A stretch of DNA of 64,000 nt from Macrostomum lignano (GCA_002269645.1 NIVC01001061.1:223627-287626), one strand, 5' to 3'; counted from the stretch's first letter, positions 20,351-53,884 are shown. Notes: a model not told the origin generated them from the sequence alone. Translations and numbers: made by a program.

Positions 20351-22451
20351 ATGTCCGGCTACGAGCATCAAGTGCAGGACTCGCACGGTGAGAGCGATGC
20401 GGCAGCCTCTGTGTATTCAGTCTGGTCCCTCTTTGAAAGCGCTGCTCCTTTGTCCCCCCTCCCCACGAACGTCAAACCCCCCCCCCCCTATTTATGCATG
20501 TCTATAGGCCTTGACTCCCTTCAGGCTCTGCATTTTTTGCTGATAAATAGCAGACAAATTTCACCAGAGGCTCCTCTGCAGTCCGCAAATCCCACGCGCT
20601 TGCAGGCTACGGCCGGCCCGTCTACAACAGCCTGCAGCACTGCAGCTCAGCGTCCGCGGCAGCCGCTGCGGAGTCTCTGCTGGCTCCGCAACCGCCGCCG
20701 CCGCCACCTTCATCGCTGCCGCCGAGTGCCGCAGCAGCTGCCGCATTCTACGGCAGCAGCCCGGTGGACTTTGGCAGCTGCTGGGCCGCCGGTGGCAACG
20801 GCGGCGGCAGCGGCGGCGGCATGGTGGACCACTCGGCTGCGGCGGCGGCGGCAGCTGCGGCCGCTGCTGCTGCGTACTCGGCCAGCAGCAGCGTTGGCAG
20901 CGGCAGCAGATTCGGGATGGTCAGCGGTGGCAGCAATGGCGCAGTCGGATACGGAAGCTTTCATCACCATGCGATGTACACAACGCCGCCGCCGCCGCAG
21001 CAGCAGCAGCAGCCGCGAGCTATGCAGCATCATCAATACCACACCGGCCTTCCTGTCCAGCATCAGCTGGGCGGCAGCTGCGACGCCTACGAAGCCGCCA
21101 TAGGCGGTGCAGCCTCTTCGTCTGCAATGGGCAGCAGAGGCGGTCAATCCGGAGGCCTCGCCGGCGTCAGCAAGATGCCAAGCGGCAGCGGCGGTGCCAG
21201 CGGCAACAGCGGCGGCATCAAGAAGGTGCCGCACGTCAAGAAGCCACTGAACGCATTCATGCTGTTCATGAAGGAGATGCGAGCCAAGGTGGTGGCTGAG
21301 TGCACTCTCAAGGAGTCGGCGGCTATCAACCAGATTCTGGGACGGAAGGTGAGGGCTGTGCCAGCAATTGCAGCAGACTGAATGACATGCATTGCGCAAA
21401 ATTAATAGCAGTTGAGCAAGACGGGGGTCTGAATACGCTCATACTTACTAAAGAGGTGTCTAAACACTCACTAAACAGGTGTCTAAACACTCACTAAACA
21501 GGTGTCTAAACACTTACTAAACAGGTGTCTAAACACTCACTAAACAGGTGTCTAAACACTCACTAAACAGGTGTCTAAACACTCACTAAACAGGTGTATA
21601 AACACTCACTAAACAGGTGTCTAAACACTCACTAAACAGGTGTCTAAACACTCACTAAACAGGTGTCTAAACACTTACTAAACAGGTGTCTAAACACTCA
21701 CTAAACAGGTGTCTAAACACTCACTAAACAGGTGTCTAAACACTCACTAAACAGGGGTTTAAACACTCAGTAGACAGGTGTCTAAAACACTCACTAGACA
21801 GGTGTCTAAACACTCACTAAACAGGTGTCTAAACACTCACTAAACACGTGTCTAAACACTCACTAAACAGGTGTATAAACACTCACTAAACAGGTGTCTA
21901 AACACTCACTAAACAGGTGTCTAAACACTCACTAAACAGGTGTCTAAACACTCACTAAACAGGGGTTTAAACACTCAGTAGACAGGTGTCTAAAACACTC
22001 ACTAGACAGGTGTCTAAACACTCACTAAACAGGTGTCTAAACACTCACTAAACAGGTGTCCAAACACTCACTAAACAGGGGTTTAAACACTCAGTAGACA
22101 GGTGTCTAAAACACTCACTAGACAGGTGTCTAAACACTCACTAAACAGGTGTCTAAACACTCACTAAACAGGTGACTAAACAATCACTATGCAGTTGCCT
22201 GAATAAATGCCAAAAGACAGGCATATACTCTAATTCCTCCCCAACAACCCGCAGTGGCACGCTCTGTCCAGAGACGAGCAGGCCAGATACTACGAGCTGG
22301 CCCGCAAAGAGAAGGAGCTTCACATGCGGATGCACCCCGGCTGGAGCGCCAGAGACAACTACGCGGCCCAGTTGGCTGCCAAGAAGAAGGCGACAAAAAA
22401 GAGGCGGCCGACTTCGGGGGAGCTGCTTTTGCAGCAGCAACAGCAACAGCG

Positions 22452-24629: not shown

Positions 24630-26075
24630 TCACACTGAGGGATATTGTGGAGAGGACAACAGCTGAGGGATATTGGGGATGAGGCAGCAGCTCACACTGA
24701 GGGATATTGGGGATGAGGCAGCAGCTCACACTGAGGGATATTGAGGATGAGGCAGCAGCTCACACTGAGGGATACTGGGGATGAGGCAGCAGCTCACACT
24801 GAGGGATATTGGGGATGAGGCAGCAGCTCACACTGAGGGATATTGGGGATGAGGCAGCAGCTCACACTGAGGGATACTGGGGGTGAGGCAGCAGCTCACA
24901 CTGAGGGATATTGGGGATGAGGCAGTAGCTCACACTGAGGGATATTGGGGATGAGGCAGCAGCTCACACTGAGGGATATTGGGGATGAGGCAGCAGCTCA
25001 CACTGAGGGATATTGGGGATGAGGCAGCAGCTCACACTGAGGGATATTGGGGATGAGGCAGCAGCTCACACTGAGGGATATTGGGGATGAGGCAGCAGCT
25101 CACACTGAGGGATATTGGGGATGAGGCAGCAGCTCACACTGAGGGATACTGGGGGTGAGGCAGCAGCTCACACTGAGGGATACTGGGGGTGAGGCAGCAG
25201 CTCACACTGAGGGATATTGGGGATGAGGCAGTAGCTCACACTGAGGGATATTGGGGATGAGGCAGCAGCTCACACTGAGGGATATTGGGGATGAGGCAGC
25301 AGCTCACACTGAGGGATATTGGGGATGAGGCAGCAGCTCACACTGAGGGATACTGGGGATGAGGCAGCAGCTCACACTGAGGGATATTGGGAATGAGGCA
25401 GCAGCTCACACTGAGGGATATTGGGGATGAGGCAGCAGCTCACACTGAGGGATATTGGGGATGAGGCAGCAGCTCACACTGAGGGATACTGGGGATGAGG
25501 CAGCAGCTCACACTGAGGGATATTGGGGATGAGGCAGCAGCTCACACTGAGGGATATTGGGGATGAGGCAGCAGCTCACACTGAGGGATACTGGGGATGA
25601 GGCAGCAGCTCACACTGAGGGATACTGGGGATGAGGCAGCAGCTCACACTGAGGGATACTGGGGATGAGGCAGCAGCTCACACTGAGGGATACTGGGGGT
25701 GAGGCAGCAGCTCACACTGAGGGATATTGGGGATGAGGCAGCAGCTCACACTGAGGGATATTGGGGATGAGGCAGCAGCTCACACTGAGGGATATTGGGG
25801 ATGAGGCAGCAGCTCACACTGAGGGATATTGGGGATGAGGCAGCAGCTCACACTGAGGGATATTGGGGATGAGGCAGCAGCTCACACTGAGGGATATTGG
25901 GGATGAGGCAGCAGCTCACACTGAGGGATATTGGGGATGAGGCAGCAGCTCACACTGAGGGATACTGGGGATGAGGCAGCAGCTCACACTGAGGGATATT
26001 GGGGATGAGGCAGCAGCTCACACTGAGGGATATTGGGGATGAGGCAGCAGCTCACACTGAGGGATATTGGGGATG
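24630..26075. repeat. 34-bp minisatellite (CACACTGAGGGATATTGGGGATGAGGCAGCAGCT), about 42 copies, between convergent TCF and MAK16
   Basis: Direct observation. Confidence 0.95.
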
Positions 26076-26287
26076 AAACAGAAACAGAAATTTGCAATCA
26101 AGCAGAAAAGAACCAAGATGCTAAACAACAGAGTTTACTATCAACGAATACTTTTGTCGGCAGCAAAATGCAATTATCTTGTCCGAGAGAAACAGATGTT
26201 TTTTGAGGACTCATTTACCGCCAATGATTGTGGCTCAAATTTATTTGACACAGACAGCCTGCTAAATGTGTGCGCTCGAAACATCAA

Positions 26288-27998
26288 TCAGTCTGAGTCG
26301 TACTCAACTGTCACCTTTGCTCGCTTCCTCGGCGGCGCGATGGCAGCCGCTCCTCTACTGCTGAGGGTCAGTTTCTGGCGCACCGGCGGCTCCTCTTCCT
26401 CGCCCTCCTCCTGCTGCTCCTGGATGTCTTCGATCTCCTCTTCAGATTCGTCAAAATCTTCCACGTATTCGGTTTCGCTTTCGGACTCGTCCTCTTCTTC
26501 TTCTTCAGACTCCTCGTCGTCCTCCTCATCTTCAACTTCAACGGCCTGCAACGCTTTCTCGTAGGCGGCCCGGTCTACGTTGACGAACTCCTCGGGGTTG
26601 GCGGCCCGCAGCCTATCCAGCATCTCCTTCTCGATGGCGGTCTCCAGGCCGGCCCGAACCAGAGCCTTATCCTCTCGTCGACGTTCGCGACGTTCAACTT
26701 TGCGCGACAGCGGCACGAGCTTCGTCTCGGAGGTGAGCACCAGCCTGCGGCTGCGCTTCTGCACCTCAAGTAGGCGGTCGAATCTAAAAAAGGGGACGGG
26801 ACAAGGATCGCGAGGTAGCGGGCTTTTTGCAAAGTTGTTTACAATGCAGTGCACCTACAGACAGGGCACCCATAGACAGTGCAGCACCTACAGACAGTGC
26901 ACCCACAGACAGTGCTGCACCTACAGGCAGGGCACGACAGACAGTGCACCCACAGACAGGGCAATACAGACAGGGCTACCACAGACAGTTCACCCACAGA
27001 CAGTGCACCCACAGACAGGGCACCCACAAACAGTGCACCACAGACAGGGCACCCACAGACAATGCACATACAGACAGTGCAGCACCTACAGACAGTGCAG
27101 CACCTACACACAGGGCACCAACAGACAGTGCAGCACCTACAGACAGTGCACCCACAGACAGTGAAGCACCCACAGACAGGGCACCCACAGACAGTGCAGC
27201 ACCCACAGACAGTGCACCCACAGACAGGGAAATACAGACAATGCACCACAGACAGTGGACCAGACAGGGCACCACAGACGGCACCAGACAGTGCACCCAC
27301 AGACAGTGCACCCATAGACAGTGTACGCACAGACAGTGCACCCACAGACAGTGCACCCATAGACAGTGTACGCAGACAGTGCAACCACAGACAGTGCACC
27401 CACAGACAGTGCACCCACAGACAGGGCACCCACATACAGTGCACCCATAGACAGTGTACGCAGACAGTGCAACCACAGACAGTGCACCCACAGACAGTGC
27501 ACCCACAGACAGGGCACCCACATACAGTGCACCCATAGACAGTGTACGCAGACAGTGCACCCACAGACAGTGCACCCACAGACAGTGCACCCACAGACAG
27601 GGCACCCACATACAGTGCACCGCAGACAGTGCACCGCAGACAGGGCAATACAGACAGGGCACCCACCTGGCAATAACCCTCCGTCGAATCCAATTGTTCC
27701 AATAGATAAGCTTCTCTTTAATCTGGCCAATGGCCCGCTCGTAGTTTCGATGCAGTTTAACTCGCTCCCACATCTTGGCCGGCAGGTGGGCCCGCTCGGC
27801 CACCTTCATGTAGAGATAGATGACGCCGTCCTCCTCTCGGACGGTGGCATACTGGGAGTTGGCCAGCGGGCAAGAGTGCCGATTGCACAAGCCGGTCAAG
27901 TTGTACTCATTTCGACAAAACTTTGACGTTTTAGTCTTGGTCATAAAACTGCAGAAGCTGTTGTTTATAATCTGCCATATTAAATCGTCGCTGTTCAT
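26288..27998 (-). CDS. MAK16: MAK16 ribosome biogenesis protein, about 275 aa; exons 27998-27667 and 26783-26288
   Basis: [18 protein letters not shown]...[29 protein letters not shown] is the MAK16 N-terminus. A phase-2 GT-AG intron joins it to [21 protein letters not shown]...[10 protein letters not shown] and an acidic tail. Confidence 0.96.
26840..27666. repeat. Degenerate CACAGACAGTGCAC(C)-based repeat filling the MAK16 intron
   Basis: The array runs right up to the GT donor at 27666. Confidence 0.9.
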
Positions 27999-31740: not shown

Positions 31741-33015
31741 GGGCCTTTTCATATTGCTTGCTCTGGTTCCAGAACCAGAACCAATTTGTGAAGTATAACT
31801 TTTTGTCTCCATAACTAGAGGGAGATACGTGCTATAAAGTTTTTATTATTGAATGACAATCGCCAAGAAGAAAGTGAAAAATTGTGCTAAGTTAGGTTGT
31901 TAAGGCAGTCAAATATACCTTTTTACGTTCTATTTGATAAAAACTGCAACCAATTTGGCCACGGCTCAGCCTGACCATAGACATAGAATTTTCCATAGAC
32001 AGCCACCGCTAGCGGCAACCAATTTGGTAAAAACTGCGAGCTATTTTGCCAGCTTGAAGATAGCAGCTGCTCTGATGGCGAATCGTGGGCCGTACCAAAA
32101 GATAAGTCAGCTGGATCGAGAGCGAATCGTGAGAGCGTACAGGAGTGGCGACGACTGGGGAGAGCTTGGCAGAATGATGGGGATGAAGAAACCGACAGTG
32201 AGGAACATCGTGACCACGTATGAACGAACTGGTAGAGTTGGCACTCTGCCAAAAGGAGGAGTGAAGAGGATGGCGCTGACGGAGGCTATGGTGGACACCA
32301 TTGTTCAATTCGAACGAGCACTTCATGGAATTCCTCTCTGAGATCGATGTTCTGATGGAAGAGGAGTTTGTGCTACTGTCCGATGGGGCTCGCGCTCACC
32401 TAGTTGTCCCTGGGATGTCTGAAGGTCATGCTCACCGATTCCTGCCTCCATACTCGCCGTTCATCAACCCGGCGGAGTACGCAGGCTCAGCGCTGAAGGC
32501 CAAGCTGAAAACGCAATTGCAATCACCTGCCATTCAGCGCGAGGTTGCAGATACTGGACTGGCTGCTGCAGCAGGTGCGACACTGCATCAGCACAGGATA
32601 CGCATTCTGAAGAGAGAAGTGCAGCAAGCACTGAACTGCATCACGCCTCTCAAGTGCCTGCGCTGGATCAACCATTCCCAGACGTACTTCAATCGGTGCT
32701 TGAATGCTGAGGACATAATGTTCTGACTTCGTGCATGTATTGTTAACATTCTTTATCGTTATTGTTATGCTATTGAGCTGCTATCTTCAAGCTGGCAAAA
32801 TAGCTCGCAGTTTTTACCAAATTGGTTGCCGCTAGCGGTGGCTGTCTATGGAAAATTGCTGCGGCTACGTCAGGCTGAGCCGTGGCCAAATTGGTTGCAG
32901 TTTTTATCAAATAGAACGTAAAAAGGAATATTAACAGAGTTTAATAGTTATACTGCGCTTTTTCTTGGAATTCCGAACCGATTCTGGTTCTGGAATTGGT
33001 AATATGAAAAGGCCC
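31741..33015 (+). mobile_element. Second copy of the same MITE (copy B), inverted relative to A and interrupted by a Tc1-like element
   Basis: Same TIRs, 3-bp TSD TAT on both sides. The outer segments are the reverse complement of copy A. Confidence 0.8.
31916..32928 (+). mobile_element. Internally deleted IS630/Tc1-like transposon with about 150-bp TIRs
   Basis: TIRs 31916-32068 and 32776-32928, TA duplication (31914-15, 32929-30). HTH-like N-terminus (MANRGPYQKIS...TVRNIVTTYERTG) is joined out of frame to DGARAH...LPPYSPFINPAE; the first catalytic Asp region is deleted. Confidence 0.85.
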
Positions 33016-34942: not shown

Positions 34943-37900
34943 CTACGACACGACCCGCGTCTCGCTGGCCACCTTCTTGACCTCCTCTGGCGAGGCCTCC
35001 TTGTTGCTGAAGCTGCAGCGGATCTCCCGGCCGTGCCGGCTCATCACAGGCCGGAAGTTGTCCACCATTGGGCGCTTCTTGGCTTTGTCGAAAAAGGTCT
35101 TGGTGAACTTCAGCAGCTGGAGGAGGCGCATCGAGGGGTCAGGGGTTCGTTAGCTGTAGCTAATTGTACATTGGGTGTGTTGTACAATTGTATGCATCCT
35201 GATCTACAGCCTGATGTACAGCCTGATCTACAGCTTGATCTACAGCCTGATCTACAGCCTGATCTACAGCCTGATCTACAGCCTGATCTACAGCCTGATC
35301 TACAGCCTGATCTACAGCCTGATGTACAGCTTGATCTACAGCTTGATCTACAGCCTGATCTATAGCCTGATCTACAGCCTGATCTACAGCCTAATCTACA
35401 GCCTGATCTACAGCTTGATCTACAGCCTGATCTACAGCCTGATGTACAGCCTGATCTATAGCTTGATCTACAGCCTGATCTACTACAGCCTGAACTACAG
35501 CCTGATCTATAGCCTGATCTACAGCCTGATCTACAGCTTGATCTACAGCCTGATCTATAGCTTGATCTACAGCCTGATCTACTACAGCCTGAACTACAGC
35601 CTGATCTATAGCCTGATCTACAGCCTGATCTACAGCCTGATGTACAGCCTGATCTACAGCCTGATGTACAGCCTGATCTACAGCCTGATTCATACCCAGA
35701 TCTATAGCCTGATATGCACTATAAAGCCTGGTCTACAGCTGATCTACAGCTGATCTATAGCTTGATCTACAGCCTGATCTACAGCCTGATCTACAGCCTG
35801 ATCTACAAGCCTGATCTACATAGCCTGGTCTACAGCTGATCTACAGCTGATCTACAGCTGATCTACAGCTTGATCTACAGCCTGGTCTACAGCTGATCTA
35901 TAGCCTGATCTATAGCCTGATCTATAGCCTGATCTACAGCCTGATCTACAGCCTGATGTACAGCCTGATCTACAACCTGATCTACAGTCTGATGTACAGC
36001 CTGATCTACAGCCTGATCTACAACCTGATCTACAGTCTGATGTACAGCCTGATCTACAGCCTGATCTACAATCCTGATCTACAGTCTGATGTACAGCCTG
36101 ATCTACAGCCTGATCTACAACCTGATCTACAGTCTGATGTACAGCCTGATCTACAGCCTGATCTACAATCCTGATCTACAGTCTGATGTACAGCCTGATC
36201 TACAGCCTGATCTACAACCTGATCTACAGTCTGATGTACAGCCTGATCTACAGCCTGATCTACAGTCTGATGTACAGCCTGATCTACAGCCTGATCTACA
36301 ACCTGATCTACAGTCTGATGTACAGCCTGATCTACAGCCTGATTTATACCCTGATCTATAGCCTGATATGCACTATAAAGCCTGGTCTACAGCTGATCTA
36401 CAGCCTGATCTACAGCCTGGTCTACAGCTGATCTATAGCCTGATCTATAGCCTGATCTATAGCCTGATCTACAGCCTGATCTACAGCCTGATCTACAGCC
36501 TGATCTACAACCTGATCTACAGTCTGATGTACAGCCTGATCTACAGCCTGATCTACAATCCTGATCTACAGTCTGATGTACAGCCTGATCTACAGCCTGA
36601 TCTACAACCTGATCTACAGTCTGATGTACAGCCTGATCTACAGCCTGATCTACAGTCTGATGTACAGCCTGATCTACAGCCTGATTTATACCCTGATCTA
36701 TAGCCTGATATGCACTATAAAGCCTGGTCTACAGCTGATCTACAGCCTGATCTACAGCCTGGTCTACAGCTGATCTATAGCCTGATCTATAGCCTGATCT
36801 ATAGCCTGATCTACAGCCTGATCTACAGCCTGATCTACAGCCTGATCTACAACCTGATCTACAGTCTGATGTACAGCCTGATCTACAGCCTGATCTACAA
36901 TCCTGATCTACAGTCTGATGTACAGCCTGATCTACAGCCTGATCTACAACCTGATCTACAGTCTGATGTACAGCCTGATCTACAGCCTGATCTACAGTCT
37001 GATGTACAGCCTGATCTACAGCCTGATCTACAACCTGATCTACAGTCTGATGTACAGCCTGATGTACAGCCTGATCTACAGCCTGATCTACAACCTGATC
37101 TACAGTCTGATGTACAGCCTGATCTACAGCCTGATTTATACCCTGATCTATAGCCTGATATGCACTATAAAGCCTGGTCTACAGCTGATCTACAGCCTGA
37201 TCTACAGCCTGGTCTACAGCTGATCTATAGCCTGATCTATAGCCTGATCTATAGCCTGATCTACAGCCTGATCTACAGCCTGATCTACAGCCTGATCTAC
37301 AAACCTGATCTACAGCTGATCTACAGCTGATCTATTAGCTTCATCTATAGCTTCATCTATAGCCTACAATAGGAAGAACTGTTTTGCGACTGCTCAACAA
37401 GGCTGAGAATCCTCATCAAAAACGACCAAACCGCTCACCAGCTCCTTCCGGATCTTCATGGAGTCGGTGAAGAGATGCCACTGCGCCACCGGGTTGCAGC
37501 TTGGGGTAGTGAAGGCGCCGTCGTAGTTCACGAACCGGTGCAGGCTCTCCGGCAGCAGGTCACGGAGCTGCAGCTCGACCGTCTCCACGTCTGAGGAGTG
37601 CAGGTGGCTGCTTTGAGACGGGCTGCTCATGGAGTGCGTATGGATGCTCCACTGGGTCTTGGAGTGCTAAACTGGATCTTGGAGTGCTCAACTGGGTCTT
37701 GGAGTGCTCAACTGGGTCTTGGAGTGCTCAACTGGGTCTTGAAGTGCTCAATCGGATCTTGGAGTGCTCAACTGGGTAATGGAGTGCTCAACTGGGTCTT
37801 GAAGTGCTCAACTGAATCTTGGAGTGCTCAACTGGGTCATAGAGTGCTCAACTGGGTCATAGAGTGCTCAACTGAGTCTTGGAGTGCTCAACTGGGTCAT

Positions 37901-40900
37901 AGAGTGCTCAACTGAGTCTTGGAGTGCTCAACTGGGTCTTGAAGTGCTCAACTGAATCTTGGAGTGCTCAACTGGGTCATAGAGTGCTCAACTGGGTCTT
38001 GAAGTGCTCAACTGGGTCTTGGAGTGCTCAACTGGGTCTTGGAGTGCTCAACTGGGTCTTGGAGTGCTCAACCGAATCTTGGAGTGCTCAACTGGGTAAT
38101 GGAGTGCTCAACTGAGTCTTGGAGTGCTCAACTGGGTCTTGGAGTGCTCAACTGGATAATGGAGTGCTCAACTGGGTCTTGGAGTGCTCAACTGGGTCTT
38201 GGAGTGCTCAACTGGGTCTTGGAGTGCTCAACCGAATCTTGGAGTGCTCAACTGGGTCATAGAGTGCTCAACTGGGTCTTGGATTTCTCAACTGGGTCTT
38301 GGAGTGCTCAACTGGGTCTTGGAGTGCTCAACTGGGTCATGAAGTGCTCAACTGGGTCTTGGAGTGCTCAACCGAATCTTGGAGTGCTCAACTGGGTAAT
38401 GGAGTGCTCAACTGAGTCTTGTAGTGCTCAACTGGGTAATGGAGTGCTCAACTGGGTCTTGAAGTGCTCAACTGAATCTTGAAGTGCTCAACTGGGTCAT
38501 AGAGTGCTCAACTGGGTCTTGGAGTGCTCAACTGGGTCTTGAAGTGCTCAAGTGGGTAATGGAGTGCTCAACTGGGTAATGGAGTGCTCAACTGGGTAAT
38601 GGAGTGCTCAGTTGGGTCATGTATTGGTTTCTGATTAATCTAATGTAACAAAACATGACATTTTTCTAAGTAGATGCAGGTAGTCAGGTATCTACGTGAA
38701 CTACAAGTTAGAACGCAGGATGCTCCTGCCCTCCTAACAAGCTTTTACGTAGGAGGAAAAGCAGATTTTCATACATTTGATACAGCTACCTGAGGAAGTC
38801 AATACATGTAGTGTGTTTTCTGGCTACCACATATATAAAAAAAGTATAATAGTCATTTTCTGGTAAACATACCCTTGGCTGACACAACAGCTCCGTGTCC
38901 CACGGGTTTGAAAAGTTCTGTCATGTTGGATAGCACCTGCGCGATCACGTGACCGGCCCAGCCGTCGTGGTCTTTAGGCTGAAATTGATTGAGGTTTGTC
39001 AGTCAGTGCGAGACTGCAGCGTGATGAAGGGGCGAAGGGCCAGCCTGACTGGGGGGGGGGGGGGTGGAACCGCAGCTGACTGGGGGGGTGGAACCGCAGC
39101 TGACTGGGGGGGGGGTGGAACCGCAGCTGACTGGGGGGGGGGGGTGGAACCGCAGCTGACTGGGGGCGGAAATGCAGCTGACTGGGGGGCGGAAACGCAG
39201 CTGACTGGGGGCGGAAACGCAGCTGACTGGGGGCGGAAACGCAGCTGACTGGGGCGGAAACGCAGCTGACTGGGGGGCGGAAACGCAGCTGACTGGGGGC
39301 GGAAACGCAGCTGACTGGGGGCGGAAACGCAGCTGACTGGGGGGCGGAAACGCAGCTGACTGGGGCGGAAACGCAGCTGACTGGGGGCGGAAATGCAGCT
39401 GACTGGGGGCGGAAATGCAGCTGACTGGGGGCGGAAACGCAGCTGACTGGGGGGCGGAAACGCAGCTGACTGGGGGCGGAAACGCAGCTGACTGGGGGCG
39501 GAAACGCTGTCTCCCACACGCAGACTTCAAGTACTCACGTTCATCTGGTGGATGAAGCCGCCCAGCACAGTGATGGCGTCGGTGGTGTTGATGGCCTTCG
39601 ACATGCTCAGCTCCTGCCTCTTGCACACGATGTGCACCTCCATGGGCGTCGGGAGCGCCTTGCCGGTGGCGTCAAACAGCCGGTGCTCGCTGCCGATGCC
39701 CTTCTCGACGTTGGCGGCGCTGCCCCAGTGGAAGTGGAACTGGAAGCAGTTGTAGGTGCCGTTGAGGTGGCCTCCGGTCACCGTCAGGTCGGCGCTGTTC
39801 ACCGCGTCAGCTTGGACTGGAGAGGAGAGGATGCACAGGCTAAGGATCGGACAGGTGATTCTCAGGATGTTGAATGTTCTTCATGAGTTCTAATTGGCTC
39901 TTTTTGGTTAGTGGCGAGTAGCACTGGCTCTGGCATGTGATTTCTAAGCTGTAGCATGTGATTTCTAAGCTGTAGCATGTGATTTCTAAGCTGTAGTATG
40001 TGATTTCTAAGCTGTAGCATGTGATTTCTAAGCTGTAGCATGTGATTTCTAAGCTGTAGCATGTGATTTCTAAGCTGTAGCATGTGATTTCTAAGCTGTA
40101 GCATGTGATTTGTTAGCTGTAGCATGTGATTTCTAAGCTGTAGCATGTGATTTCTTAGCTTTAATAGGTGCCTTATAGACTCTAACAGGCACTTGTCTGA
40201 TGTCCTATGGTACAAATGTCTTCTCAGATTTTGCAGGTGTGTTCTGACCTCAGCAGCTAATGTGCTTTTTAAGGTAGTGCCCTGCCTTCCTACAGACCAT
40301 CAACTCACTGGAGTGTCCGTTGTTCTTCACGATGAACTTTCTCTCATCGTGCCAGCCCTTGCCCAGTCCGATTTTCTTCACCTTGGCCGACTTGTTCTTG
40401 CAGAGTCCCATCTCGATGTTGATGGGCGAGGGCCGGTTGGCCGGGAGGTCCTTGCAGAATGGGCTAATCTGCCACCACTTGGGCGGGGCTGCGGGGTGGT
40501 CAGAGGTATAAGACGACTTGCCTCCTCTTGGCAACAATAATTTAGCAAAGTTTAGCAGTTTGCAGTTTTCATGGCAACAAAACACCACTCGGTCTTACCG
40601 AACTCGCAGTGAGGACCGCGCGCGTTCTCGTAGGCGGGGTTGTACACGAAAGCTTTGGTCTCGCAGGGAATGACTGCGTTAGGTGGGTTGAGGCACAGTG
40701 TTAGTAGTGCATGTTTGTAAGTCAAAAAGGCGGGTTTGAGAAGATGTCAACATACGAGTATATAGATTCTGTGGTGACTGTGTGATAGTGACACAAGACT
40801 GTAACTGAGCTACATGTACATAGAGTAGGGTAGACTGAGTGAGTAAGAAAGTCAGAGAATAAGAGACACATTGAGAGCCAGGGAGAGACGCAGGGACAAA

Positions 40901-42375
40901 GAAGGACGTAGAGAGATGTAGAGAGAGACGGAGAGACGGAGAGATAGAAAGAGACGAGAGAGAGACAAAGAGACAAAGAGAAAGACTGAGAAAGCGACGG
41001 AGGGAGAGGTTGAAGAGAGAAGTACTGGCAAAGTAGAAGTTTCAAATGTGAGATCATATGAAAATGAGCTACTAATTGATGTCAAAATGAGATCGGGCTT
41101 TATTTATGCGGTGTGAACGAGCATTAATCAAGTCAGTTTGCTTTACTCAAGAAAAAAGAAGAGTTAGCTTTCATTATTACATCGAGTACACTGTCGTTGG
41201 GCTCAGATAAAAAGTGAGTTAGCTCCCATTGCGCTCGTGCTATGCATGGTTAATTGGTTAGTGACAGATACGTCTAGAAGCCTTACGGGCACAGTCGATC
41301 TTCCACGACGAGTCCTGATCGTACAGCTTGGTCTCGGCCCAGCGTTCCAGCCGCAGCTTGAACTCACTGTGCCGGATGTAATGGCGAGGGTTCCTCAGGG
41401 ACTGCAGTCGCACGTATCCGTTGCTCATGATGACTACCTTAAAGGTGGAGGCGTTCCTAAACTCTGCCGTGTTTTCGAACTTTGTCATCATGACGAAGTG
41501 GTCGGCAACCGTGTTGAGGAAGTGGCCAGGCTTCTCAGCTGACTCGATGGACACGGCTCGAGGATTGCCGTTCAGAGCTGGCGTGACGAACTTCAGTCTG
41601 GTGCCGTTGGTGGTGCTGATGGTGGAGATCACGTCGATACCGGCCTTGACGGAGTATTTGGGATAATTCTTCGAGATCAGATGGAACTCGCCGTCGCAAA
41701 CGTCCAGCTTGAACAGTTTGTCTGTAACAAATTCAAGTCTTTGTAGTTTTCTATCCAGAAAAAAACCAACGAAAACTTTCTGTCCCTGGGAGGCATACAA
41801 GAAACAAGCGACTTACCGCTTGCGCAGACAACTCCGAACGATGAATCAGCCTTGAACAGGTTGGTATCTGTCCAGCTCATGAGCTTCAGCTTCATTGACT
41901 GATGTCTCAGGTAATGCTTGGAGTGCGTCGTACTCTTGAATCGATAGTAGCCTTCCCCAGCCTTCTCAAGCAGGAACGAGGCCTCCCGGTTGAACAGCGC
42001 GCTCTTGTCGGTTTTCACCAACTTGATGATGTTGTCGACGTTGCACAGGAAGTAGCCCGGCTGAGACAGCGACTCCAGCGAAATGCCGTCCTTTGTTCCA
42101 TCAAGAGCGTCCCGCTCAACAAACCTGGTCCCGTTGCCAATGGCGATGCCCATCTCGCCGTTGCCCCTCTGGGTCAGGTAGTAAGTTGGGAAGTTGTACG
42201 AGTTGAAGATCACCGCATTTGGGCACATTTCTGCAACGAAGACACAGTGGAAAAGCGTGATGGACGGTAATTTCCCGAAGCAGTCGTAATTCTATTAATT
42301 AGAAAACTTACTCTTAGCCATCGAGGCCTGAACGCAGGCCACCAGAAGAGCCGTCAGCAGCAGGAACGGACGCAT
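34943..42375 (-). CDS. Secreted AbfB/CBM42-like x2 + alpha-carbonic anhydrase fusion protein, about 625 aa; exons 42375-42312, 42230-41817, 41721-41287, 40673-40599, 40488-40309, 39816-39539, 38978-38873, 37590-37439, 35116-34943
   Basis: Signal peptide [18 protein letters not shown]; two AbfB-like repeats (SLES..PGYFL; YLRH/YIRH...LF/Y..DSSF/W); CA motifs [42 protein letters not shown]. All eight introns are GT-AG with compatible phases (1,1,1,1,1,0,1,0); CDS total 1878 nt. The start of exon 5 could alternatively lie at a nearby upstream AG. Confidence 0.8.
35190..37365. repeat. 12-bp minisatellite (CTACAGCCTGAT) with higher-order structure, in the last intron of the CA fusion gene
   Basis: About 180 units; a marker variant ATGCACTATAAAGCCTGGTC recurs at about 35714, 36368, 36710 and 37160. 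Confidence 0.95.
37650..38615. repeat. 20-bp minisatellite (GGAGTGCTCAACTGGGTCTT), intronic
   Basis: About 48 copies. Confidence 0.95.
39045..39505. repeat. 22-24 bp G-rich minisatellite (GCGGAAACGCAGCTGACTGGGG), intronic
   Basis: About 20 copies differing in G-run length. Confidence 0.95.
39910..40155. repeat. 21-bp minisatellite (GCATGTGATTTCTAAGCTGTA), intronic
   Basis: About 11 copies. Confidence 0.95.
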
Positions 42376-49294: not shown

Positions 49295-52200
49295 TCATTC
49301 TTCGGTGAAAACTCCGGCGCCTCGTTCGCGTCTGAGCGTCTCGCGTCGACGCTGTGGAGTCCGCAGCGCCACCGCCTGCACCAACTTGAAGGCGGAGGCG
49401 GCCGCGTCCTGAAGGTAACGGGGCCCGTCAGCGCCAGCCGCGGTGGCGCGCAGTTCGACGCCGTCATCCTCGTCGGCGGTGGCATTGGAGCGGCCGGCAG
49501 CTGCGGCAGGCCGGGCGGCCAGGCAGCGGAGCAGCCAGTCCAGCAGGATGCTCGGCACGTTGACCGGCGGCGGCAGCGTGTTGATGACCTCGAACTCCAG
49601 CAGCAGCTGGTAGCGATAGCGCCTCCAGGTCACAAAGCCATTGGCGTCCTTGACTGACACGGTGAGACTGAACTTGGCGATGAGTAGGTTGATGAGCAGC
49701 AGGTTCACCACGATCAGGTAGACGTGCATGAGACCGCCAGTGTACGCCCGGAGGCCATTCGGGTGCGGGCAGCCCTGCGAGTTGTCCTCGCCGTCCAGAC
49801 AGCCAGCCAGGCTGTCGTAGCGCAGCTCGCCGAAGGCCAAGAGCAGCGGGCGAAGATAAATGTCCCAGTAGAGCTGGGTCTGGTTGACCCGGAGCACGCT
49901 GCCGGAGGCGGTGTACAACTGGAAGGTCGGGGGAGGAGAATGTGATTTACAGTCTATGGCAAAACCATACGAAAGGCAGAAAGGCAAAGCCACAGACTAC
50001 CATAGACGAAACTATTGATTTAGTTAAGGGAGACCTTCCGTCAACAACGCATATTCCGTGATTGACTGAAGCCACTGGACACGCATCCCAACGGGGTTTC
50101 ACAAAATTTGTCAACCTACATGTATGTGAGAATTCAAGGGGCCCACCAATTGGGTAATTTCCGGACGAATTTGTCAACCAAAGAAACTACGAGTATAACC
50201 ATTCGATTAACGTCCAGGCCATTTGTGCTGCCACAAGCACCTTTCTTGACGTAAACTGTGCAGTGGACTGGGTCCGTTCATGACTCGAGGATTTTCTGCA
50301 ACAGTGATCTCTACGGCTCTCTTCATGGTGCGGCTTATCATCTTGGAGTTTCTTTCTGATTATCTTTCTCCTCTTCAAGAAGTGTATCAGTTTGGACCAT
50401 AGACAACGTTGAATCTCTCAAAAATGGCGCCTTAAGTTGGGCGCTCAGGAAGCGACACTCAAAAAGAATTCTCATTGATTTTTTAGACCAAACTTGACGC
50501 ACGACGCCCTAAATGCCCTAAATTTGTACAAATTTAGTCTAAATGGATAGATTCATTTCGATAGTCTCGACCACAGATACTATAACCACTGTAAACACTG
50601 TAAACAATATAAACCCTACTGTCTGTAGTCAAACCCCACTGTCTGTAGTCAAACCCCACTGTCTGTAGTCAAACCCCACTGTCTGTAGTCAAACCCCACT
50701 GTCTGTAGTCAAACTCCACTGTCTGTAGTCAAACCCCACTGTCTGTAGTCAAACTCCACTGTCTGTAGTCAAACCCCACTGTCTGTAGTCAAACCCCACT
50801 GTCTGTAGTCAAACCCTACTGTATCTAGTAAAAACCACACTATCTGCAGTAAAACCTCACTGTCTATGGCAAAAACCACACTATCTGCAGTAAAACCTCA
50901 CTGTCTATGGCAAAACCACACAATCCACAGTAATACCTCCACTGTCTAGTAAAACCCCCACTGTCTGTAGTAAAATTCCACTGTCTATAGTGGAAAACTC
51001 CGCTGTCTGCGGTAATACAACCCAAATTTCTGTAGTAGAGCATCGCACCACTGGTCAGAAAATGGCATCCCACCTGATTTCCCGGCGTCAGCAGAGCGTG
51101 AAAGAAGACCCCGCTGCAGACCACTAGAAAGAAGAACATGGCAACAAGGAAAGGCAGCAGATCCGCCCAGAACAGCGCCTTCATCATGTTGATGAACGGG
51201 CCGAATTTTTGATAGGCGCGCAGTTTCAGCACAAATTTCAGGCCGCAGAACATGAACGATACGCCTAGCAGGAGCCTGCAGACGTACAGCAGCTGGCCTG
51301 CATCGGCTGCCCCGGCTACCAAGGCGGTCTTGAAGGCCAGACCCAGCAGGTGGAACAGCAACTGCAGCTGGTCGATGAGGTTCCAGATGTTGAAGTACTG
51401 TTTGCCAGTCCTGAGCAGCTCGTGCAGCTCCTGCAGGCTGTAGCTGATGAAGTAGACAACCATGAGGGAGTCGGTCCACCGCCATCGCGAGTCCAGCTGG
51501 ATGATGTAGAAGGCGTGCAGAGCCATGAAGACCAGCAGGGCGGCGGCGTGCAGCAGGAACTTCTCCCTGGGCGAGGCCAGGTTCGAGCACCGGCGCCCCG
51601 GCGAGCTGGGGTAGGCGCCTCGGCGCCAGCGCCGGTCAACCAGCTCAACGAAGCAGCGCGTGGCAAAGAAGCTCTCCGGCGACTTCTTGGCGAGGCAGGC
51701 GCCGACTCCTGACGGTGGCGGCCGCAGCAGGTGGTGGTGGACGAGCGGCTGGCAGGACGGCGGGCAGGTGGCGTAGATCTGGTCCACGGCGTTCAGGCAG
51801 ACCAGCTCGGCGAAGTCGCGCAGCTCACAGAGACTTTCGGGCGACATGGCGACAACTTGGCGATGCCTGCTGTCATCCTGATGACGAGACTGCGACAGCA
51901 GCGGCGAGGCAGCTGGCGGGAGGCGCTTCAGCTGATTCTCACAGGCGGCCCGGAGGTCCAGGCAGCAGTGCAGAAGGTCTGGACGTGGCAGCAGCAGCAT
52001 CTCGCCAGCCAGCTCCAGGTGGCCGAACGGCACCAGTTCGTCCGGCCGGTGCTCGACCAGGTGCTCCGGACGGAGCTGCCCGAAGCGCAGCAGGTGACGG
52101 ACGAGTTCCGCGCTGCCCGAAGCCACGGCCGCTCTGGCCAGAGCCCGGCTGTCCGATTGCGTCGGCTCGACTCGGAGCAGCAGCGGCCGGAGTCGGGCTG

Positions 52201-52741
52201 GAAGCAACTCGGACGCGTCCGCCTCCAACGCCTGCCGTTCAGCGGCGGACAGCAGCGGCAGGTCGGCGTCGTCCGCCTCGATGGCTTCCGGCAGCAGCCG
52301 GCCGAGCAGCCGCGGGCACCGGCCGCCGGCGATGGCGTCGAGCATCGTGGCCGGGTGGCGCTTGGCCAGACAGCCGGACAGCTGGCGCCACAGCGAGGCA
52401 TCAGCCTGTTCGGGCAGCTCGGCGCTGAGCAGCTGCTCAAGAGCGTCCAGCCGGCCGGCCCTGGCCGCGGCCAGGAGAGCCCAGGTGGCCAGGCTGGGGC
52501 TCTGCACCGCCAGGGAGACCAGCGGCTCCGGCAACTGCTGGCACCGCTCGAGCTCGTCCTCCAGTAGGAGGCGAGCGGCACCGGCGGCCGAGGCTTCAAC
52601 GGCTGCATTCAGAAGTTTGAGACGAGTCGAACCAGCATCAGCAACGTCCAGGAGCTCGGCCAATCTGTCCGGATTGTCCGAACGAACGGCTGCGAGAATT
52701 TCTTCGGGCTTAGCGGAGGTCGCAGCGGCTGAAGACGTCAT
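49295..52741 (-). CDS. TRP cation channel, TRPM-like, about 763 aa as modelled; exons 52741-51074 and 49918-49295
   Basis: Pre-S1 LVDRRW, SPREKF, YFNIWNLID, GPFINMMK, pore LAFGEL, S6 VNLLLINLLIAKF, TRP box TWRRYRY and LPPPVN. A phase-0 GT-AG intron joins the two ORFs. The 5' end is uncertain. Confidence 0.85.
50620..51010. repeat. 20-bp minisatellite (GTCTGTAGTCAAACCCCACT) in the TRP channel intron
   Basis: About 11 clean copies decaying towards the donor site. Confidence 0.9.
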
Positions 52742-53884
52742 GGCTTCCACTCACCTGGGTGATAAAATGCACTTCTATCCAATTTCAAGAATTTCTAAGA
52801 AATTGAATTCGACCAAAGTTCGTGGTGGAATATCTGGACAGTCCTATCTAGTTAATGTATTGTAGTTATAATTGGAATTCAGCCTACAAATGATTAAGTT
52901 ATTCATAATTTTCGAAGTGTTAAAACTACTAAAAGTCACAAAAGGAGACAAACACTCACCTGTACAGTTAATAGCCAGATTAAAACAGGTCGCTAATGCT
53001 TGCAGTTCCCCCTCTATTTTATTGATTTTTTGGGGGGGGACAACGCGGTATGGATTAAAATTGGGGACGCGGTGGGCGATAAGCGGAACCAAAATGAATA
53101 GCCGGGCAGGGGCAGCGCGGGAGGCACGCTTTGTGCCCCGGGGCCGTAGCTGCATGGAGAGTTTATGGATTCCACAAGCGTTTAACTGGGAGGCCTGGCA
53201 CGCCCTTAATCTCCGTTCTTCCTCGCTGTTCCCTGTCTCTCCCTCTCCCTCTCTCTCTCTTCTAATCCTGTCCGCACTGCACGTTTAGCAACTGCATGTG
53301 TGGTTGGTTAGGGGAGAAGCACATTATCCCGCTTTCATCCCAAGCATGTACATAGTGGAGTACATCCAGCTATGTCTGTTTTAAGTTTTCAGTGTGTGAC
53401 AAAATATCGCTGCTCGATCCGAGAAAGCTAGACCCGTCAAAATAGCCTCGTTTTACAAAATTCATCAAATTTTCTTTCATAAATGAATGGACAGTTTCTA
53501 AAATAGTTTACGAACATAAATAGTTTGCAGCATTTTTACTGTTGAGTGACCAGGTGATAAAGTCAATATAGGTAGAATAAGCGCAATGTATATTTAGAGT
53601 TTCTGCACAAAGTTTCAGGAGGGTTGCGGTTTCTGATTTAGGGTTAGGATCGGCAGTGAAGTGTTTGTAGACCTCAGATAGAGAAATGAAAGCTGGGAAT
53701 GGGAAAATGTAAACAGAACCTGACCAAATACAAGCAAAATAATATTGATGATTAGTGAAACGAAATAAATTAAAAGTATTGCTTTATAATTTGGCAGTAT
53801 AGTTGTGAAAAATATTTTTGTGGATGTTTGTGAGTCGGTCGCCACAATTACACAGTCATGCAGACTGGGGAGACTCCAAAACAG

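What the first reader, a model, noticed from the sequence alone, without database searches (positions are those of the whole stretch)
34943..42375. Secreted carbonic anhydrase fused to two AbfB/CBM42-like sugar-binding domains
Seen: nine exons join with matching phases into signal peptide + AbfB + AbfB + alpha-CA (about 625 aa). The CA keeps the zinc-ligand His motifs (QFHFHW, EVH), the His64-equivalent NNGH, the Thr-Thr of TTPSC, and the two Cys (PFC, PSC) typical of extracellular CAs. No separate start was found for the CA. Known: AbfB/CBM42 is the arabinose-binding beta-trefoil of fungal and bacterial GH54/GH43 arabinofuranosidases and is rare in animals (otogelin-type proteins). I do not know this domain pairing from any described CA family. 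Inference: a glycan-tethered CA that sets local pH or bicarbonate in mucus, adhesive or gut secretion, or on ingested algal walls.
Basis: partly seen in the sequence, partly recalled or inferred. Interest (0 to 1): 0.88.

Follow-up and report, generated by a model that had tools for sequence, protein, structure and literature searches.

The report
Flatworm carbonic anhydrase fused to lectin modules
This is a real, expressed gene of the flatworm Macrostomum lignano that joins two sugar-binding-type (AbfB/CBM42) modules to an intact secreted carbonic anhydrase; the pairing was found nowhere outside this genus, it is already in public databases without a description, and its function is untested.

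Summary
Nine GT-AG exons on the minus strand (42375-34943) give a 625-aa protein. It is 100% identical to GenBank PAA72792.1 (Macrostomum lignano Mlig012818g1), which comes from an RNA-seq-derived annotation. Pfam scores two AbfB modules (E 5e-34) and one alpha-carbonic anhydrase (E 6e-46).

The fusion is real:
- A published mass-spectrometry peptide, IDCALIPCETK, spans the AbfB-to-CA exon junction.
- An intronless 2.4-kb contig from a related species carries the same continuous ORF at 70% identity.
- All parts are under purifying selection (dN/dS 0.16-0.22).
- The CA part has no start codon or signal peptide of its own.

All catalytic CA residues and the extracellular-type disulfide cysteines are kept. 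Each AbfB module is one symmetric phase 1-1 exon, placed between the signal-peptide exon and the CA exons. A CA-only paralogue (Mlig032849) has the same layout without those two exons.

Only one of three sugar pockets per module keeps the canonical His and Asp, so glycan binding is plausible but unproven. Among 1.84 billion representative proteins, only Macrostomum proteins combine the two domains.

Best reading: a glycan-tethered extracellular CA. Tissue and ligand are unknown. It is a new variant of a known kind, already deposited but undescribed. Interest is moderate.

The parts
42312..42375 (-). Exon 1: start codon and signal peptide ([21 protein letters not shown], residues 1-21). It ends in phase 1.
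   Evidence: This is the first ATG after an in-frame stop. It has a basic n-region, a 12-residue hydrophobic core and a V-Q-A|S cleavage-type motif, read directly from the sequence. The h-region aligns with the signal peptide of the CA-only paralogue.
41817..42230 (-). Exon 2 (414 nt, symmetric phase 1-1): the whole AbfB/CBM42 module 1 (residues 22-160). The gamma pocket has H131, M134 and D150. Cysteines C24 and C157 sit at the two ends of the module.
41287..41721 (-). Exon 3 (435 nt, symmetric phase 1-1): the whole AbfB/CBM42 module 2 (residues 161-304). The gamma pocket has H277, F280 and D296. Cysteines C168 and C303 sit at the two ends of the module. It contains the MS peptide [13 protein letters not shown] and the first half of the junction peptide.
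40599..40673 (-). Exon 4: Cys-containing N-terminal extension or linker of the CA ([25 protein letters not shown], residues 305-329, C308 and C327). It holds the second half of the junction peptide IDCA|LIPCETK and the peptide [12 protein letters not shown].
   Evidence: The same segment directly follows the signal peptide in paralogue Mlig032849. dN/dS is 0.06.
40309..40488 (-). Exon 5: start of the CA domain, with the Cys23 equivalent (C341), Asn62 (N386) and the proton-shuttle His64 (H388).
39539..39816 (-). Exon 6: CA core. It holds Gln92 (Q415), zinc ligands His94, His96 and His119 (H417, H419, H451), Glu106 (E433), His107 (H434) and Glu117 (E449).
38873..38978 (-). Exon 7: CA, a helical insertion region (residues 483-517). 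This is the least conserved part of the CA.
37439..37590 (-). Exon 8: CA, with Thr199 and Thr200 (T545, T546), the Cys203 equivalent (C549) and Trp209 (W555).
34943..35116 (-). Exon 9: end of the CA (Asn244 = N588, Arg246 = R590), a conserved 21-aa C-terminal tail ([21 protein letters not shown]) and the TAG stop.
   Evidence: The tail is 18/21 identical in the orthologue and absent from the CA-only paralogue.
35198..37365 (.). Intron 8 minisatellite: a 12-nt unit in about 182 copies. It makes up most of the 2322-nt intron.
37641..38618 (.). Intron 7 minisatellite: a 20-nt unit in 49 copies.
39053..39507 (.). Intron 6 minisatellites: units of 22 nt and 27-29 nt.
39933..40160 (.). Intron 5 minisatellite: a 21-nt unit in 11 copies.
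40674..41286 (-). Intron 3 (613 nt): it separates the AbfB exons from the CA exons. This is the junction whose splicing is confirmed at protein level.

Best explanation
The locus is one protein-coding gene of Macrostomum lignano (Mlig012818g1). Its single mRNA encodes a secreted, N-glycosylated, disulfide-rich protein with this order of parts: signal peptide, two beta-trefoil AbfB/CBM42 modules, a short Cys-containing linker, a catalytically complete alpha-carbonic anhydrase of the extracellular type (Cys23-Cys203), and a conserved 21-aa tail.

Shown here: the gene structure, the domain identities, the continuity of the polypeptide across the AbfB/CA junction, purifying selection on every part, and the restriction of the pairing to Macrostomum.

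Inferred origin: two symmetric phase 1-1 AbfB exons sit in the phase-1 intron between the signal-peptide exon and the first CA exon of a pre-existing secreted CA gene. The CA-only paralogue Mlig032849 shows that ancestral layout.

Inferred mechanism: the two trefoils act as a bivalent lectin through their gamma pockets (H131/D150 and H277/D296). They hold the enzyme on a glycan matrix outside the cell, such as the worm's own mucus or secretions, or polysaccharide of ingested diatoms or microbes. There the CA interconverts CO2 and HCO3-/H+ and so buffers or sets pH and bicarbonate locally instead of diffusing away. The ligand and the tissue are not known.
For: Gene model and identity: (100% identical to PAA72792.1).

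Deposited annotation: it is built from RNA-seq and de novo transcripts (StringTie/TACO/TBONE/TransDecoder), with transcriptional units cut at trans-splice sites (PMC5730564).

Protein-level junction evidence: three unique high-confidence tryptic peptides are listed in Dataset S2, sheet footprints_Trypsin_intact_1, of Wunderer et al. 2019 (PMC6410801). IDcALIPcETK is residues 301-311 and spans the exon 3/4 junction. [12 protein letters not shown] lies in the linker. [13 protein letters not shown] lies in AbfB2.

Orthologue: a 2370-nt intronless contig (Logan SRR30276812) carries a 632-aa ORF at 70% identity. It aligns with the spliced CDS in a single HSP across all eight junctions.

Selection: dN/dS is 0.23 for AbfB1, 0.22 for AbfB2, 0.06 for the linker, 0.16 for the CA and 0.15 for the tail.

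Domains: Pfam; PDB sequence hits to CA II and to CBM42 entries 3KMV, 9FNK, 3AKF and 9NXG.

Structure: the AlphaFold2 AbfB tandem has pLDDT 86.8. Its single modules superpose on CBM42 structures at TM 0.87-0.90 and rmsd 1.4-1.6 A. The CA part matches CA IX and CA II at TM about 0.8.

Catalytic residues are all conserved in both species.

Secretion: a signal peptide, 12 conserved Cys in the mature protein, 7 N-X-S/T sequons, and detection in material left on a surface by the worms.

Pockets: the His and Asp of the AbfB2 gamma pocket and the His of the AbfB1 gamma pocket are invariant across the aligned family. They correspond to the arabinose-contacting His and Asp of CBM42 (PMC12493170).

Exon symmetry and paralogue. 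The protein with exons 2-3 removed aligns end to end with Mlig032849g1 at 65% identity, E 2e-159.
Against: - No assay or expression pattern was found, so tethering, the ligand and the site of action are all inference.
- The alpha and beta pockets of both modules have lost the canonical His and Asp. In the gamma pockets the sugar-contacting Tyr is replaced by Met134 and Phe280. Carbohydrate binding could therefore be weak, altered or lost.
- Animals are not known to make arabinofuranosides (own knowledge), so the textbook CBM42 ligand would have to be dietary or microbial, or the specificity must differ.
- The footprint MS sample also contains ribosomal proteins, calmodulin, profilin and peroxiredoxin. 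Detection there shows the protein exists but not that it is specifically secreted or adhesive.
- That SRR30276812 is an RNA-seq run is inferred from the absence of introns. It was not looked up.
- Signal-peptide cleavage was judged by eye, with no predictor.
Confidence: 0.55

Rival explanations
1. The fusion is real and the CA is active, but the AbfB modules no longer act as lectins. They would serve as a protein-binding, oligomerising or spacer element, or bind a non-carbohydrate ligand, and the enzyme would be a freely soluble secreted CA.
For: Four of the six pockets are degenerate, and the two remaining pockets lack the Tyr hydroxyl. Beta-trefoils are also used for protein binding: fascin and IL-1-type folds appear among the Foldseek and Pfam side hits.
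Against: The gamma-pocket His and Asp are invariant or conserved across flatworm, hydrozoan and unidentified relatives. Purifying selection on both modules (dN/dS about 0.22) fits a retained binding function. The closest single-module structural matches are sugar-binding CBM42s at 1.4-1.6 A.
Confidence: 0.27
2. The two halves work as separate products. Either they come from separate mRNAs (a polycistronic precursor cut by spliced-leader trans-splicing at the exon 4 acceptor), or the secreted protein is cleaved in the linker into a free lectin and a free CA.
For: About 7% of M. lignano transcriptional units are polycistronic precursors. The linker is predicted to be disordered (pLDDT below 50 for residues 304-346).
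Against: The tryptic peptide IDCALIPCETK crosses the junction. The TBONE pipeline did not cut the unit here, since the deposited CDS is the full 625 aa. The CA half has no Met before M355 and no signal peptide. The orthologue ORF is continuous. The linker is the most constrained segment (dN/dS 0.06) and is part of the CA-only paralogue. Partial cleavage after secretion cannot be excluded.
Confidence: 0.06
3. The CA domain is a non-catalytic CA-related module, like CARPs or the CA-like domain of RPTP gamma/zeta, used for binding. The protein would then be a pure adhesion or recognition molecule.
For: None specific. It was considered only because multi-domain proteins with CA-like domains are often acatalytic (own knowledge).
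Against: All three zinc histidines are present in both species, along with Glu106, Glu117, Thr199, Thr200, His64, Gln92, His107, Trp209, Asn244 and Arg246. dN/dS for the CA is 0.16.
Confidence: 0.05
4. The fusion is an assembly or annotation artefact: a chimeric contig or a chimeric gene model.
For: The ML2-based UniProt models of the same gene are visibly defective, with a missing VKNNGHS, an internal deletion and frameshifts. This shows that annotation errors occur at this locus.
Against: Three separate genomic copies (g1, g2, g3, on contigs of 288, 122 and 152 kb) encode the same 625-aa protein with 0-2 substitutions. There is independent MS evidence and an independent orthologue contig.
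Confidence: 0.01

Closest known systems
Extracellular vertebrate alpha-carbonic anhydrases (CA IV, VI, IX, XII), with human CA II as the structural reference
   Same: Same fold (Foldseek TM about 0.8 to CA IX and CA II). The catalytic residues match. The Cys23-Cys203 pair is typical of extracellular isoforms, and the best PDB sequence hit is the engineered A23C/L203C CA II, 4PXX. The protein is made with a signal peptide and carries N-glycosylation sequons.
   Different: It has no GPI or transmembrane anchor, no proteoglycan-like domain as in CA IX, and only about 27% identity. Instead it carries two N-terminal beta-trefoil modules and a conserved C-terminal tail. Leu198 is Phe and Asn67 is Gln.
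M. lignano paralogue Mlig032849g1 (PAA entry; UniProt name 'Carbonic anhydrase 4'), 332 aa
   Same: 65% identity over signal peptide, Cys linker and CA when exons 2-3 are removed in silico. The signal-peptide core is similar and the linker is the same.
   Different: The paralogue has no AbfB modules and no C-terminal tail. It shows what the gene looks like without the two phase 1-1 exons.
CBM42 / AbfB domain of GH43 and GH54 alpha-L-arabinofuranosidases (3KMV, 9FNK, 9NXH/9NXI, 3AKF, 1WD3)
   Same: Pfam PF05270 is above threshold. Sequence hits go down to E 1.6e-11. It is a beta-trefoil of three subdomains that superposes at 1.4-1.9 A. The gamma-pocket His and Asp are retained.
   Different: It is attached to a carbonic anhydrase rather than a glycoside hydrolase, and it occurs in an animal. 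The alpha and beta pockets are degenerate, and the gamma-pocket Tyr is replaced by Met or Phe. The ligand is unknown.
Uncharacterised secreted AbfB-repeat proteins of Hydrozoa and a tunicate (for example Hydractinia XP_057315557.1, 303 aa; Hydra XP_065671834.1; Clytia; Clavelina CAK8691440.1)
   Same: These are among the nearest relatives of the AbfB part (27-32% identity over both modules). The Hydractinia proteins have the same layout of signal peptide plus two AbfB modules as the N-terminal half here.
   Different: None carries a CA or any other enzyme domain. Most keep YLRH motifs in more subdomains than the Macrostomum modules do. A test of module-to-module orthology was inconclusive.
Double beta-trefoil lectins (HA33 haemagglutinin component, amaranthin)
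   Same: The tandem of two trefoils matches these over both modules in Foldseek (E about 1e-12). This is a working analogy for bivalent glycan binding.
   Different: Sequence identity is only 7-12% and the relative orientation of the modules differs (rmsd above 12 A). This is analogy of architecture, not membership.
Nacrein-type shell-matrix carbonic anhydrases of molluscs (own knowledge; not tested here)
   Same: The concept is the same: a secreted alpha-CA that carries an extra non-catalytic segment thought to hold it in an extracellular matrix.
   Different: Nacrein has a Gly-X-Asn repeat inserted within the CA and acts in a mineralising matrix. Here the extra parts are N-terminal lectin-type domains in a non-calcifying flatworm.

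Membership tests
Alpha-carbonic anhydrase (Pfam PF00194) | Sequence match to the family profile above the curated threshold | tested here: met
   157.6 bits against a cut-off of 27, E 5.7e-46, profile positions 4-254 of 254.
Alpha-carbonic anhydrase (Pfam PF00194) | Three zinc-ligand histidines (His94, His96, His119) | tested here: met
   H417, H419 and H451, also present in the orthologue and the paralogue.
Alpha-carbonic anhydrase (Pfam PF00194) | Catalytic network: Thr199-Glu106 gatekeeper, Glu117, Gln92, and the proton shuttle His64 | tested here: met
   T545, E433, E449, Q415 and H388.
Alpha-carbonic anhydrase (Pfam PF00194) | CA fold | tested here: met
   The AF2 model has pLDDT mostly 70-90 in this domain. 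Foldseek gives TM about 0.8 to CA IX and CA II, E about 1e-18.
Alpha-carbonic anhydrase (Pfam PF00194) | Reversible CO2 hydration activity, inhibited by sulfonamides | not testable with these tools
   Needs recombinant protein and a stopped-flow or esterase assay.
Extracellular (secreted or membrane) class of alpha-CAs | Signal peptide and the Cys23-Cys203 disulfide pair | tested here: met
   The N-terminal hydrophobic leader was read from the sequence. C341 and C549 align with positions 23 and 203. Formation of the disulfide itself was not tested.
CBM42 / AbfB domain (Pfam PF05270) | Sequence match to the family profile above the curated threshold, in each module | tested here: met
   117.7 bits against 22.8, in two stretches. 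The modules also hit each other and PDB CBM42 chains.
CBM42 / AbfB domain (Pfam PF05270) | Beta-trefoil fold of three subdomains | tested here: met
   The AF2 tandem has pLDDT 86.8. Single modules superpose on 3KMV, 9FNK and 9NXI at TM 0.87-0.90, rmsd 1.4-1.6 A.
CBM42 / AbfB domain (Pfam PF05270) | Sugar-contacting His / Tyr / Asp set in the beta and gamma pockets (as in AtAbf43C: H70/Y73/D89 and H118/Y121/D136) | tested here: inconclusive
   The gamma pockets keep His and Asp (H131/D150, H277/D296), but Tyr is replaced by M134 and F280. The beta pockets read FLCN...NREASF and FLNT...RNASTF, so His is lost and Asp is replaced by Glu or Asn. The alpha pockets are degenerate.
CBM42 / AbfB domain (Pfam PF05270) | Binding of terminal alpha-L-arabinofuranose | not testable with these tools
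   Needs glycan arrays, ITC or affinity gels.
Exon-shuffled mobile module (class 1-1 exon) | The module is encoded by a symmetric phase 1-1 exon lying in a phase-1 intron, and a relative lacks the module | tested here: met
   Exons 2 (414 nt) and 3 (435 nt) both enter and leave in phase 1. Exon 1 ends in phase 1 and exon 4 starts in phase 1. Paralogue Mlig032849 lacks both modules and aligns across the gap. The direction of change (gain or loss) and the donor gene were not resolved.

The most novel reading that the evidence does not exclude
The AbfB-CA could be a working part of the flatworm's temporary adhesion system. Its lectin modules would dock it onto the glycosylated adhesive protein Mlig-ap2 in the footprint. 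Local production of HCO3-/H+ would then change charge or pH at the ap1-ap2 interface. That would supply or modulate the 'small negatively charged' releasing factor that Wunderer et al. 2019 postulated but did not identify.

The only support is that the protein's peptides occur in the footprint MS sample. That sample also holds many cellular contaminants. The transcript was not found in the searchable text of the supplements of the positional RNA-seq paper or of the three-species RNA-seq paper.
Probability: 0.04. Interest if true: 0.8.

Novelty: new variant of a known kind. Interest (0 to 1): 0.4.

Why it matters
If the lectin tether is real, this would be the first alpha-carbonic anhydrase positioned by carbohydrate-binding modules. 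That would be a simple natural way to fix CO2/bicarbonate/pH chemistry onto a glycan surface such as mucus, secreted glue or food particles. It also offers a ready-made design for immobilising CA on polysaccharide supports.

In evolutionary terms it is a clean, recent textbook case of domain gain. Two symmetric phase 1-1 exons sit between a signal-peptide exon and an enzyme, and the unmodified paralogue is still present in the same genome.

M. lignano has transgenesis, RNAi and in situ methods, so the function can be tested directly. The stakes are limited: it is one lineage-restricted gene family, both domains are well known, and the sequence is already public.

Tried and rejected
1. I looked for expression or tissue data by gene ID (Mlig012818), old transcript ID (RNA815_2810) and 'carbonic anhydrase'. 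I searched the full-text library and the supplements of six M. lignano papers. Only the footprint MS entry turned up. Held supplement files are truncated, so absence is weak evidence.

2. I looked for any paper that describes an AbfB plus CA protein. There was none; the three hits are unrelated.

3. I looked for the architecture elsewhere. A phmmer search of the full protein against 1.84 billion representatives, followed by a per-domain re-scan of all returned proteins, found both domains only in Macrostomum entries. The other multi-stretch hits are tandem-CA proteins.

4. UniProt A0A1I8HD97 lacks VKNNGHS, which includes His64. I could not derive its 'KFILQADAV' from this window with any GT-AG pair (reasoned). 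The orthologue and the GenBank models keep VKNNGHS, so I treat it as an ML2/MAKER model defect and not an isoform.

5. A Foldseek search with the full-length model was swamped by CA entries. I therefore modelled the AbfB tandem separately.

6. I tested whether the module pair was acquired as a unit by scoring module 1 and module 2 against hydrozoan two-module proteins. No consistent 1-to-1 or 2-to-2 pattern appeared, and the two Macrostomum modules are as similar to each other as to any outgroup. The result is inconclusive.

7. I tried to identify the species behind SRR30276812. Nothing was found.

8. An exact look-up of the UniProt model in the assemblies found nothing on record.

Full report
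**What is in the sequence.**
The region 34943-42375 was read on the minus strand and translated in three frames. It holds nine coding blocks that join through canonical GT...AG introns with matching phases. The exons are 42375-42312, 42230-41817, 41721-41287, 40673-40599, 40488-40309, 39816-39539, 38978-38873, 37590-37439 and 35116-34943. The CDS is 1878 nt, giving 625 aa plus a TAG stop.

The start ATG is the first Met after an in-frame stop 33 codons upstream. The introns are 81 to 2322 nt long. The larger ones consist largely of minisatellite arrays: a 12-mer in about 182 copies, a 20-mer in 49 copies, 22/27/29-mers, and a 21-mer in 11 copies.

**Domain identities.**
Pfam gives Carb_anhydrase (residues 332-604, E 5.7e-46) and two AbfB stretches (E 5.1e-34). 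Both are far above the curated cut-offs, and nothing else scores at E up to 1.

Against PDB sequences, the C-terminal half matches human CA II and its variants. The best hit is the engineered disulfide variant 4PXX. The N-terminal half matches CBM42 modules of bacterial arabinofuranosidases and an anti-sigma factor: 3KMV at E 1.6e-11, then 9FNK, 3AKF and 9NXG/9NXI.

An AlphaFold2 model of the whole protein has mean pLDDT 74. The two AbfB modules score 80-96, the CA mostly 70-90, and residues 304-346 fall below 50. Its CA part superposes on CA IX and CA II at TM about 0.8.

A separate model of the AbfB tandem has pLDDT 86.8. Single modules superpose on CBM42 structures at TM 0.87-0.90 and rmsd 1.4-1.6 A. 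The pair as a whole resembles double-trefoil lectins such as HA33 and amaranthin.

**Whose gene it is.**
[quoted passage not shown] Two further genomic copies, g2 and g3, differ by one and two residues.

That annotation is not ab initio. It derives from a genome-guided transcriptome built from RNA-seq plus de novo transcripts. Transcriptional units were cut at experimentally mapped trans-splice and poly(A) sites, and ORFs were called by TransDecoder (PMC5730564).

Older UniProt entries from the ML2 assembly describe the same gene with defects: one lacks VKNNGHS, one has an internal deletion, and one is frameshifted.

**Is the fusion real?** Four independent lines say yes.

1. Protein evidence. 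The footprint mass-spectrometry table of Wunderer et al. 2019 is Dataset S2, sheet footprints_Trypsin_intact_1. It lists a 2596-nt transcript annotated only as 'Eukaryotic-type carbonic anhydrase' (RNA815_2810.1) with three unique high-confidence peptides.
   - IDcALIPcETK is residues 301-311 of this protein. Residues IDCA come from exon 3 (end of AbfB2), L305 is the split codon, and IPCETK comes from exon 4. The peptide therefore crosses the AbfB/CA junction.
   - [12 protein letters not shown] lies in the linker.
   - [13 protein letters not shown] lies at the start of AbfB2.
2. A related species. A 2370-nt contig assembled from run SRR30276812 carries a continuous 632-aa ORF that is 70% identical over the whole length. 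The spliced M. lignano CDS aligns to it in a single 1829-column HSP across all eight exon junctions. It therefore behaves as an mRNA. That the run is RNA-seq is my inference.
3. Selection. Against that orthologue, dN/dS is 0.23 for AbfB1, 0.22 for AbfB2, 0.06 for the linker, 0.16 for the CA and 0.15 for the C-terminal tail. dS is about 1, so the values are approximate.
4. No independent start. The CA half has no Met before M355, which lies beyond the Cys23-equivalent, and it has no leader of its own.

The rival of two mRNAs from a polycistronic precursor had to be considered, because about 7% of M. lignano units are such precursors. The evidence above makes it very unlikely.

**State of the enzyme.**
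Mapped onto human CA II numbering, the following are all present in M. lignano and in the orthologue:
- zinc ligands His94, His96 and His119 (H417, H419, H451)
- Glu106, His107 and Glu117
- Thr199 and Thr200
- the proton shuttle His64 (H388), plus Asn62 and Gln92
- Val121, Val143, Trp209, Asn244 and Arg246

Leu198 is Phe and Asn67 is Gln. C341 and C549 sit at positions 23 and 203, the disulfide of extracellular CAs.

The mature protein has 12 cysteines conserved between the two species, and the M. lignano protein has 7 N-X-S/T sequons. It has no C-terminal hydrophobic segment. This is a secreted, catalytically competent-looking alpha-CA and not an acatalytic CA-related protein. Enzyme activity itself cannot be tested here.

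**State of the lectin modules.**
In CBM42, arabinofuranose is held in the beta and gamma pockets by a His, a Tyr three residues later, and an Asp of the D-A-T-F motif. In AtAbf43C these are H70/Y73/D89 and H118/Y121/D136. The alpha pocket is often dead (PMC12493170).

Here, only the gamma subdomain of each module keeps the YLRH/YIRH and D-S-S-F/W motifs:
- AbfB1 gamma pocket: H131, M134, D150
- AbfB2 gamma pocket: H277, F280, D296

The beta subdomains read FLCN...NREASF and FLNT...RNASTF, and the alpha subdomains are degenerate. H131, H277 and D296 are invariant in an alignment with the orthologue and five more distant relatives (one hydrozoan, four of unidentified source). D150 is kept in six of the seven sequences.

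So each module plausibly offers one binding pocket, which would make the protein bivalent. The Tyr hydroxyl is missing, and the ligand need not be arabinofuranose. I rate glycan binding as likely but unproven.

**Origin.**
Each AbfB module is encoded by exactly one exon, and both exons are symmetric phase 1-1 (414 and 435 nt). They lie between a signal-peptide exon that ends in phase 1 and a linker exon that starts in phase 1. Removing them in silico keeps the reading frame.

The resulting 343-aa protein aligns end to end with a second M. lignano gene product, BOX15_Mlig032849g1 (332 aa, made of signal peptide, the same Cys linker and a CA). Identity is 65% and E is 2e-159, and the alignment includes the hydrophobic core of the signal peptide.

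This is the classical footprint of module insertion by exon shuffling into a pre-existing secreted CA gene. Loss from the paralogue cannot be formally excluded.

The nearest relatives of the modules include uncharacterised secreted AbfB-repeat proteins of animals: Hydractinia, Hydra, Clytia and the tunicate Clavelina. Metagenomic and bacterial proteins rank among them. A test of whether the pair was acquired as a unit or duplicated in place was inconclusive.

**How widespread is the pairing?**
In the word-indexed search of 5.8 billion proteins, only Macrostomum entries carry PF00194 together with PF05270. I also ran an exhaustive phmmer search of 1.84 billion cluster representatives. A protein matching both halves would accumulate score and rank near the top of that list. 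I then re-scanned every returned protein with each domain separately. Only the M. lignano family and the SRR30276812 orthologue have both domains. The other multi-stretch hits are tandem-CA proteins of molluscs, crustaceans and fishes. No paper in the searchable library mentions such a protein.

**How it most likely works.**
Shown: a single secreted polypeptide with two trefoils and an intact CA, conserved in at least two Macrostomum species and present as protein in adult worms.

Inferred: the trefoils anchor the enzyme to a glycan-rich extracellular phase, where it speeds CO2/HCO3-/H+ equilibration locally. Candidate sites are epidermal mucus, gut lumen with ingested diatoms, glandular secretions, or the adhesive footprint.

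The only positional hint is its detection in footprint material. That sample also contains ribosomal proteins, calmodulin and profilin, so the detection is not specific. I found no in situ, RNAi or differential-expression data.

**Verdict.**
The sequence is already public and automatically annotated with both domains, but it has not been described. The lectin function is only partly supported by pocket conservation. The physiological role is open.

It is a lineage-restricted new variant of two well-known domain families, and a neat exon-shuffling example in a genetically tractable flatworm. Interest is moderate at 0.4, not 0.88.

Noticed in passing
window 49295-49993 (-) and 50864-52750 (-): The upstream neighbour on the same strand is a TRPM4/5-like cation channel gene. 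The 232-aa ORF matches the pore and TRP-helix region of TRPM4 and TRPM5 structures (E 2e-10). The 628-aa ORF further upstream has no Pfam or PDB hit but looks like the preceding part of the same gene. Curiously, the 2019 proteomics annotation of the CA transcript gives a fish protein named 'TRPM4' as its best UniRef50 hit (e=5e-24). That fish entry presumably also contains a CA domain, so a TRPM-CA neighbourhood may exist there too. This could be coincidence.
   Followed up: partly
window 26976-27998 (-), overlapping the repeat array 26847-27666: This ORF has an N-terminal match to the Ribosomal_L28e/MAK16 family (E 6e-36). By eye it reads as a MAK16-like first exon. The mechanical ORF then runs on into a 15/88-nt minisatellite, which is presumably intronic.
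   Followed up: partly
window 20764-21381 (+): An ORF ends in an HMG box (Pfam E 7e-10; [37 protein letters not shown]). By eye it is of the TCF/LEF type, so a transcription-factor gene lies in the GC-rich block at 18-24 kb.
   Followed up: partly
window 31934-32726 (+): A Tc1/mariner-type transposase remnant is split into two overlapping ORFs: a Sleeping-Beauty-type HTH followed by DDE_3. It is probably a decayed copy.
   Followed up: partly
window 12691-16655 (+): A 661-aa intronless ORF with no Pfam hit is followed by an ORF containing a 93-nt coding tandem repeat (15407-15844) and an ORF with DUF4806 (16077-16655). It looks like a repeat- or transposon-derived gene cluster in an AT-rich block.
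   Followed up: no
whole window, for example 54764-56540, 57138-59711, 24630-26076, 21443-22189: The density of long minisatellite arrays is very high: 24 TRF rows score at least 300, and the largest is a 33-mer in 78 copies. Four of the eight introns of the CA gene (introns 5-8) carry such arrays, and intron 3 holds a short two-copy repeat. Strong local GC skew at 54-60 kb comes from these arrays.
   Followed up: no
window 34943-35005 (-), protein residues 605-625: The C-terminal 21-aa tail ([21 protein letters not shown]) is 18/21 identical in the 70%-identical orthologue, which is more conserved than the AbfB modules. It is absent from the CA-only paralogue. It could be a sorting or interaction motif specific to the fused form.
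   Followed up: partly
window 37590/38873 junction (exons 7/8); L001 about 1660-1680: Apart from one in the signal peptide, the only indel between the two orthologues (3 aa) falls exactly at the exon 7/8 boundary. This suggests splice-site sliding in one lineage.
   Followed up: no
UniProt A0A1I8HD97, A0A1I8HFW3, A0A1I8FLP6 (same gene, ML2 assembly): Three older public models of this gene are defective. One lacks VKNNGHS, which includes the proton-shuttle His. One lacks 66 aa of AbfB1. One is a frameshifted 368-aa mosaic. Anyone judging catalytic competence from those entries would be misled.
   Followed up: yes
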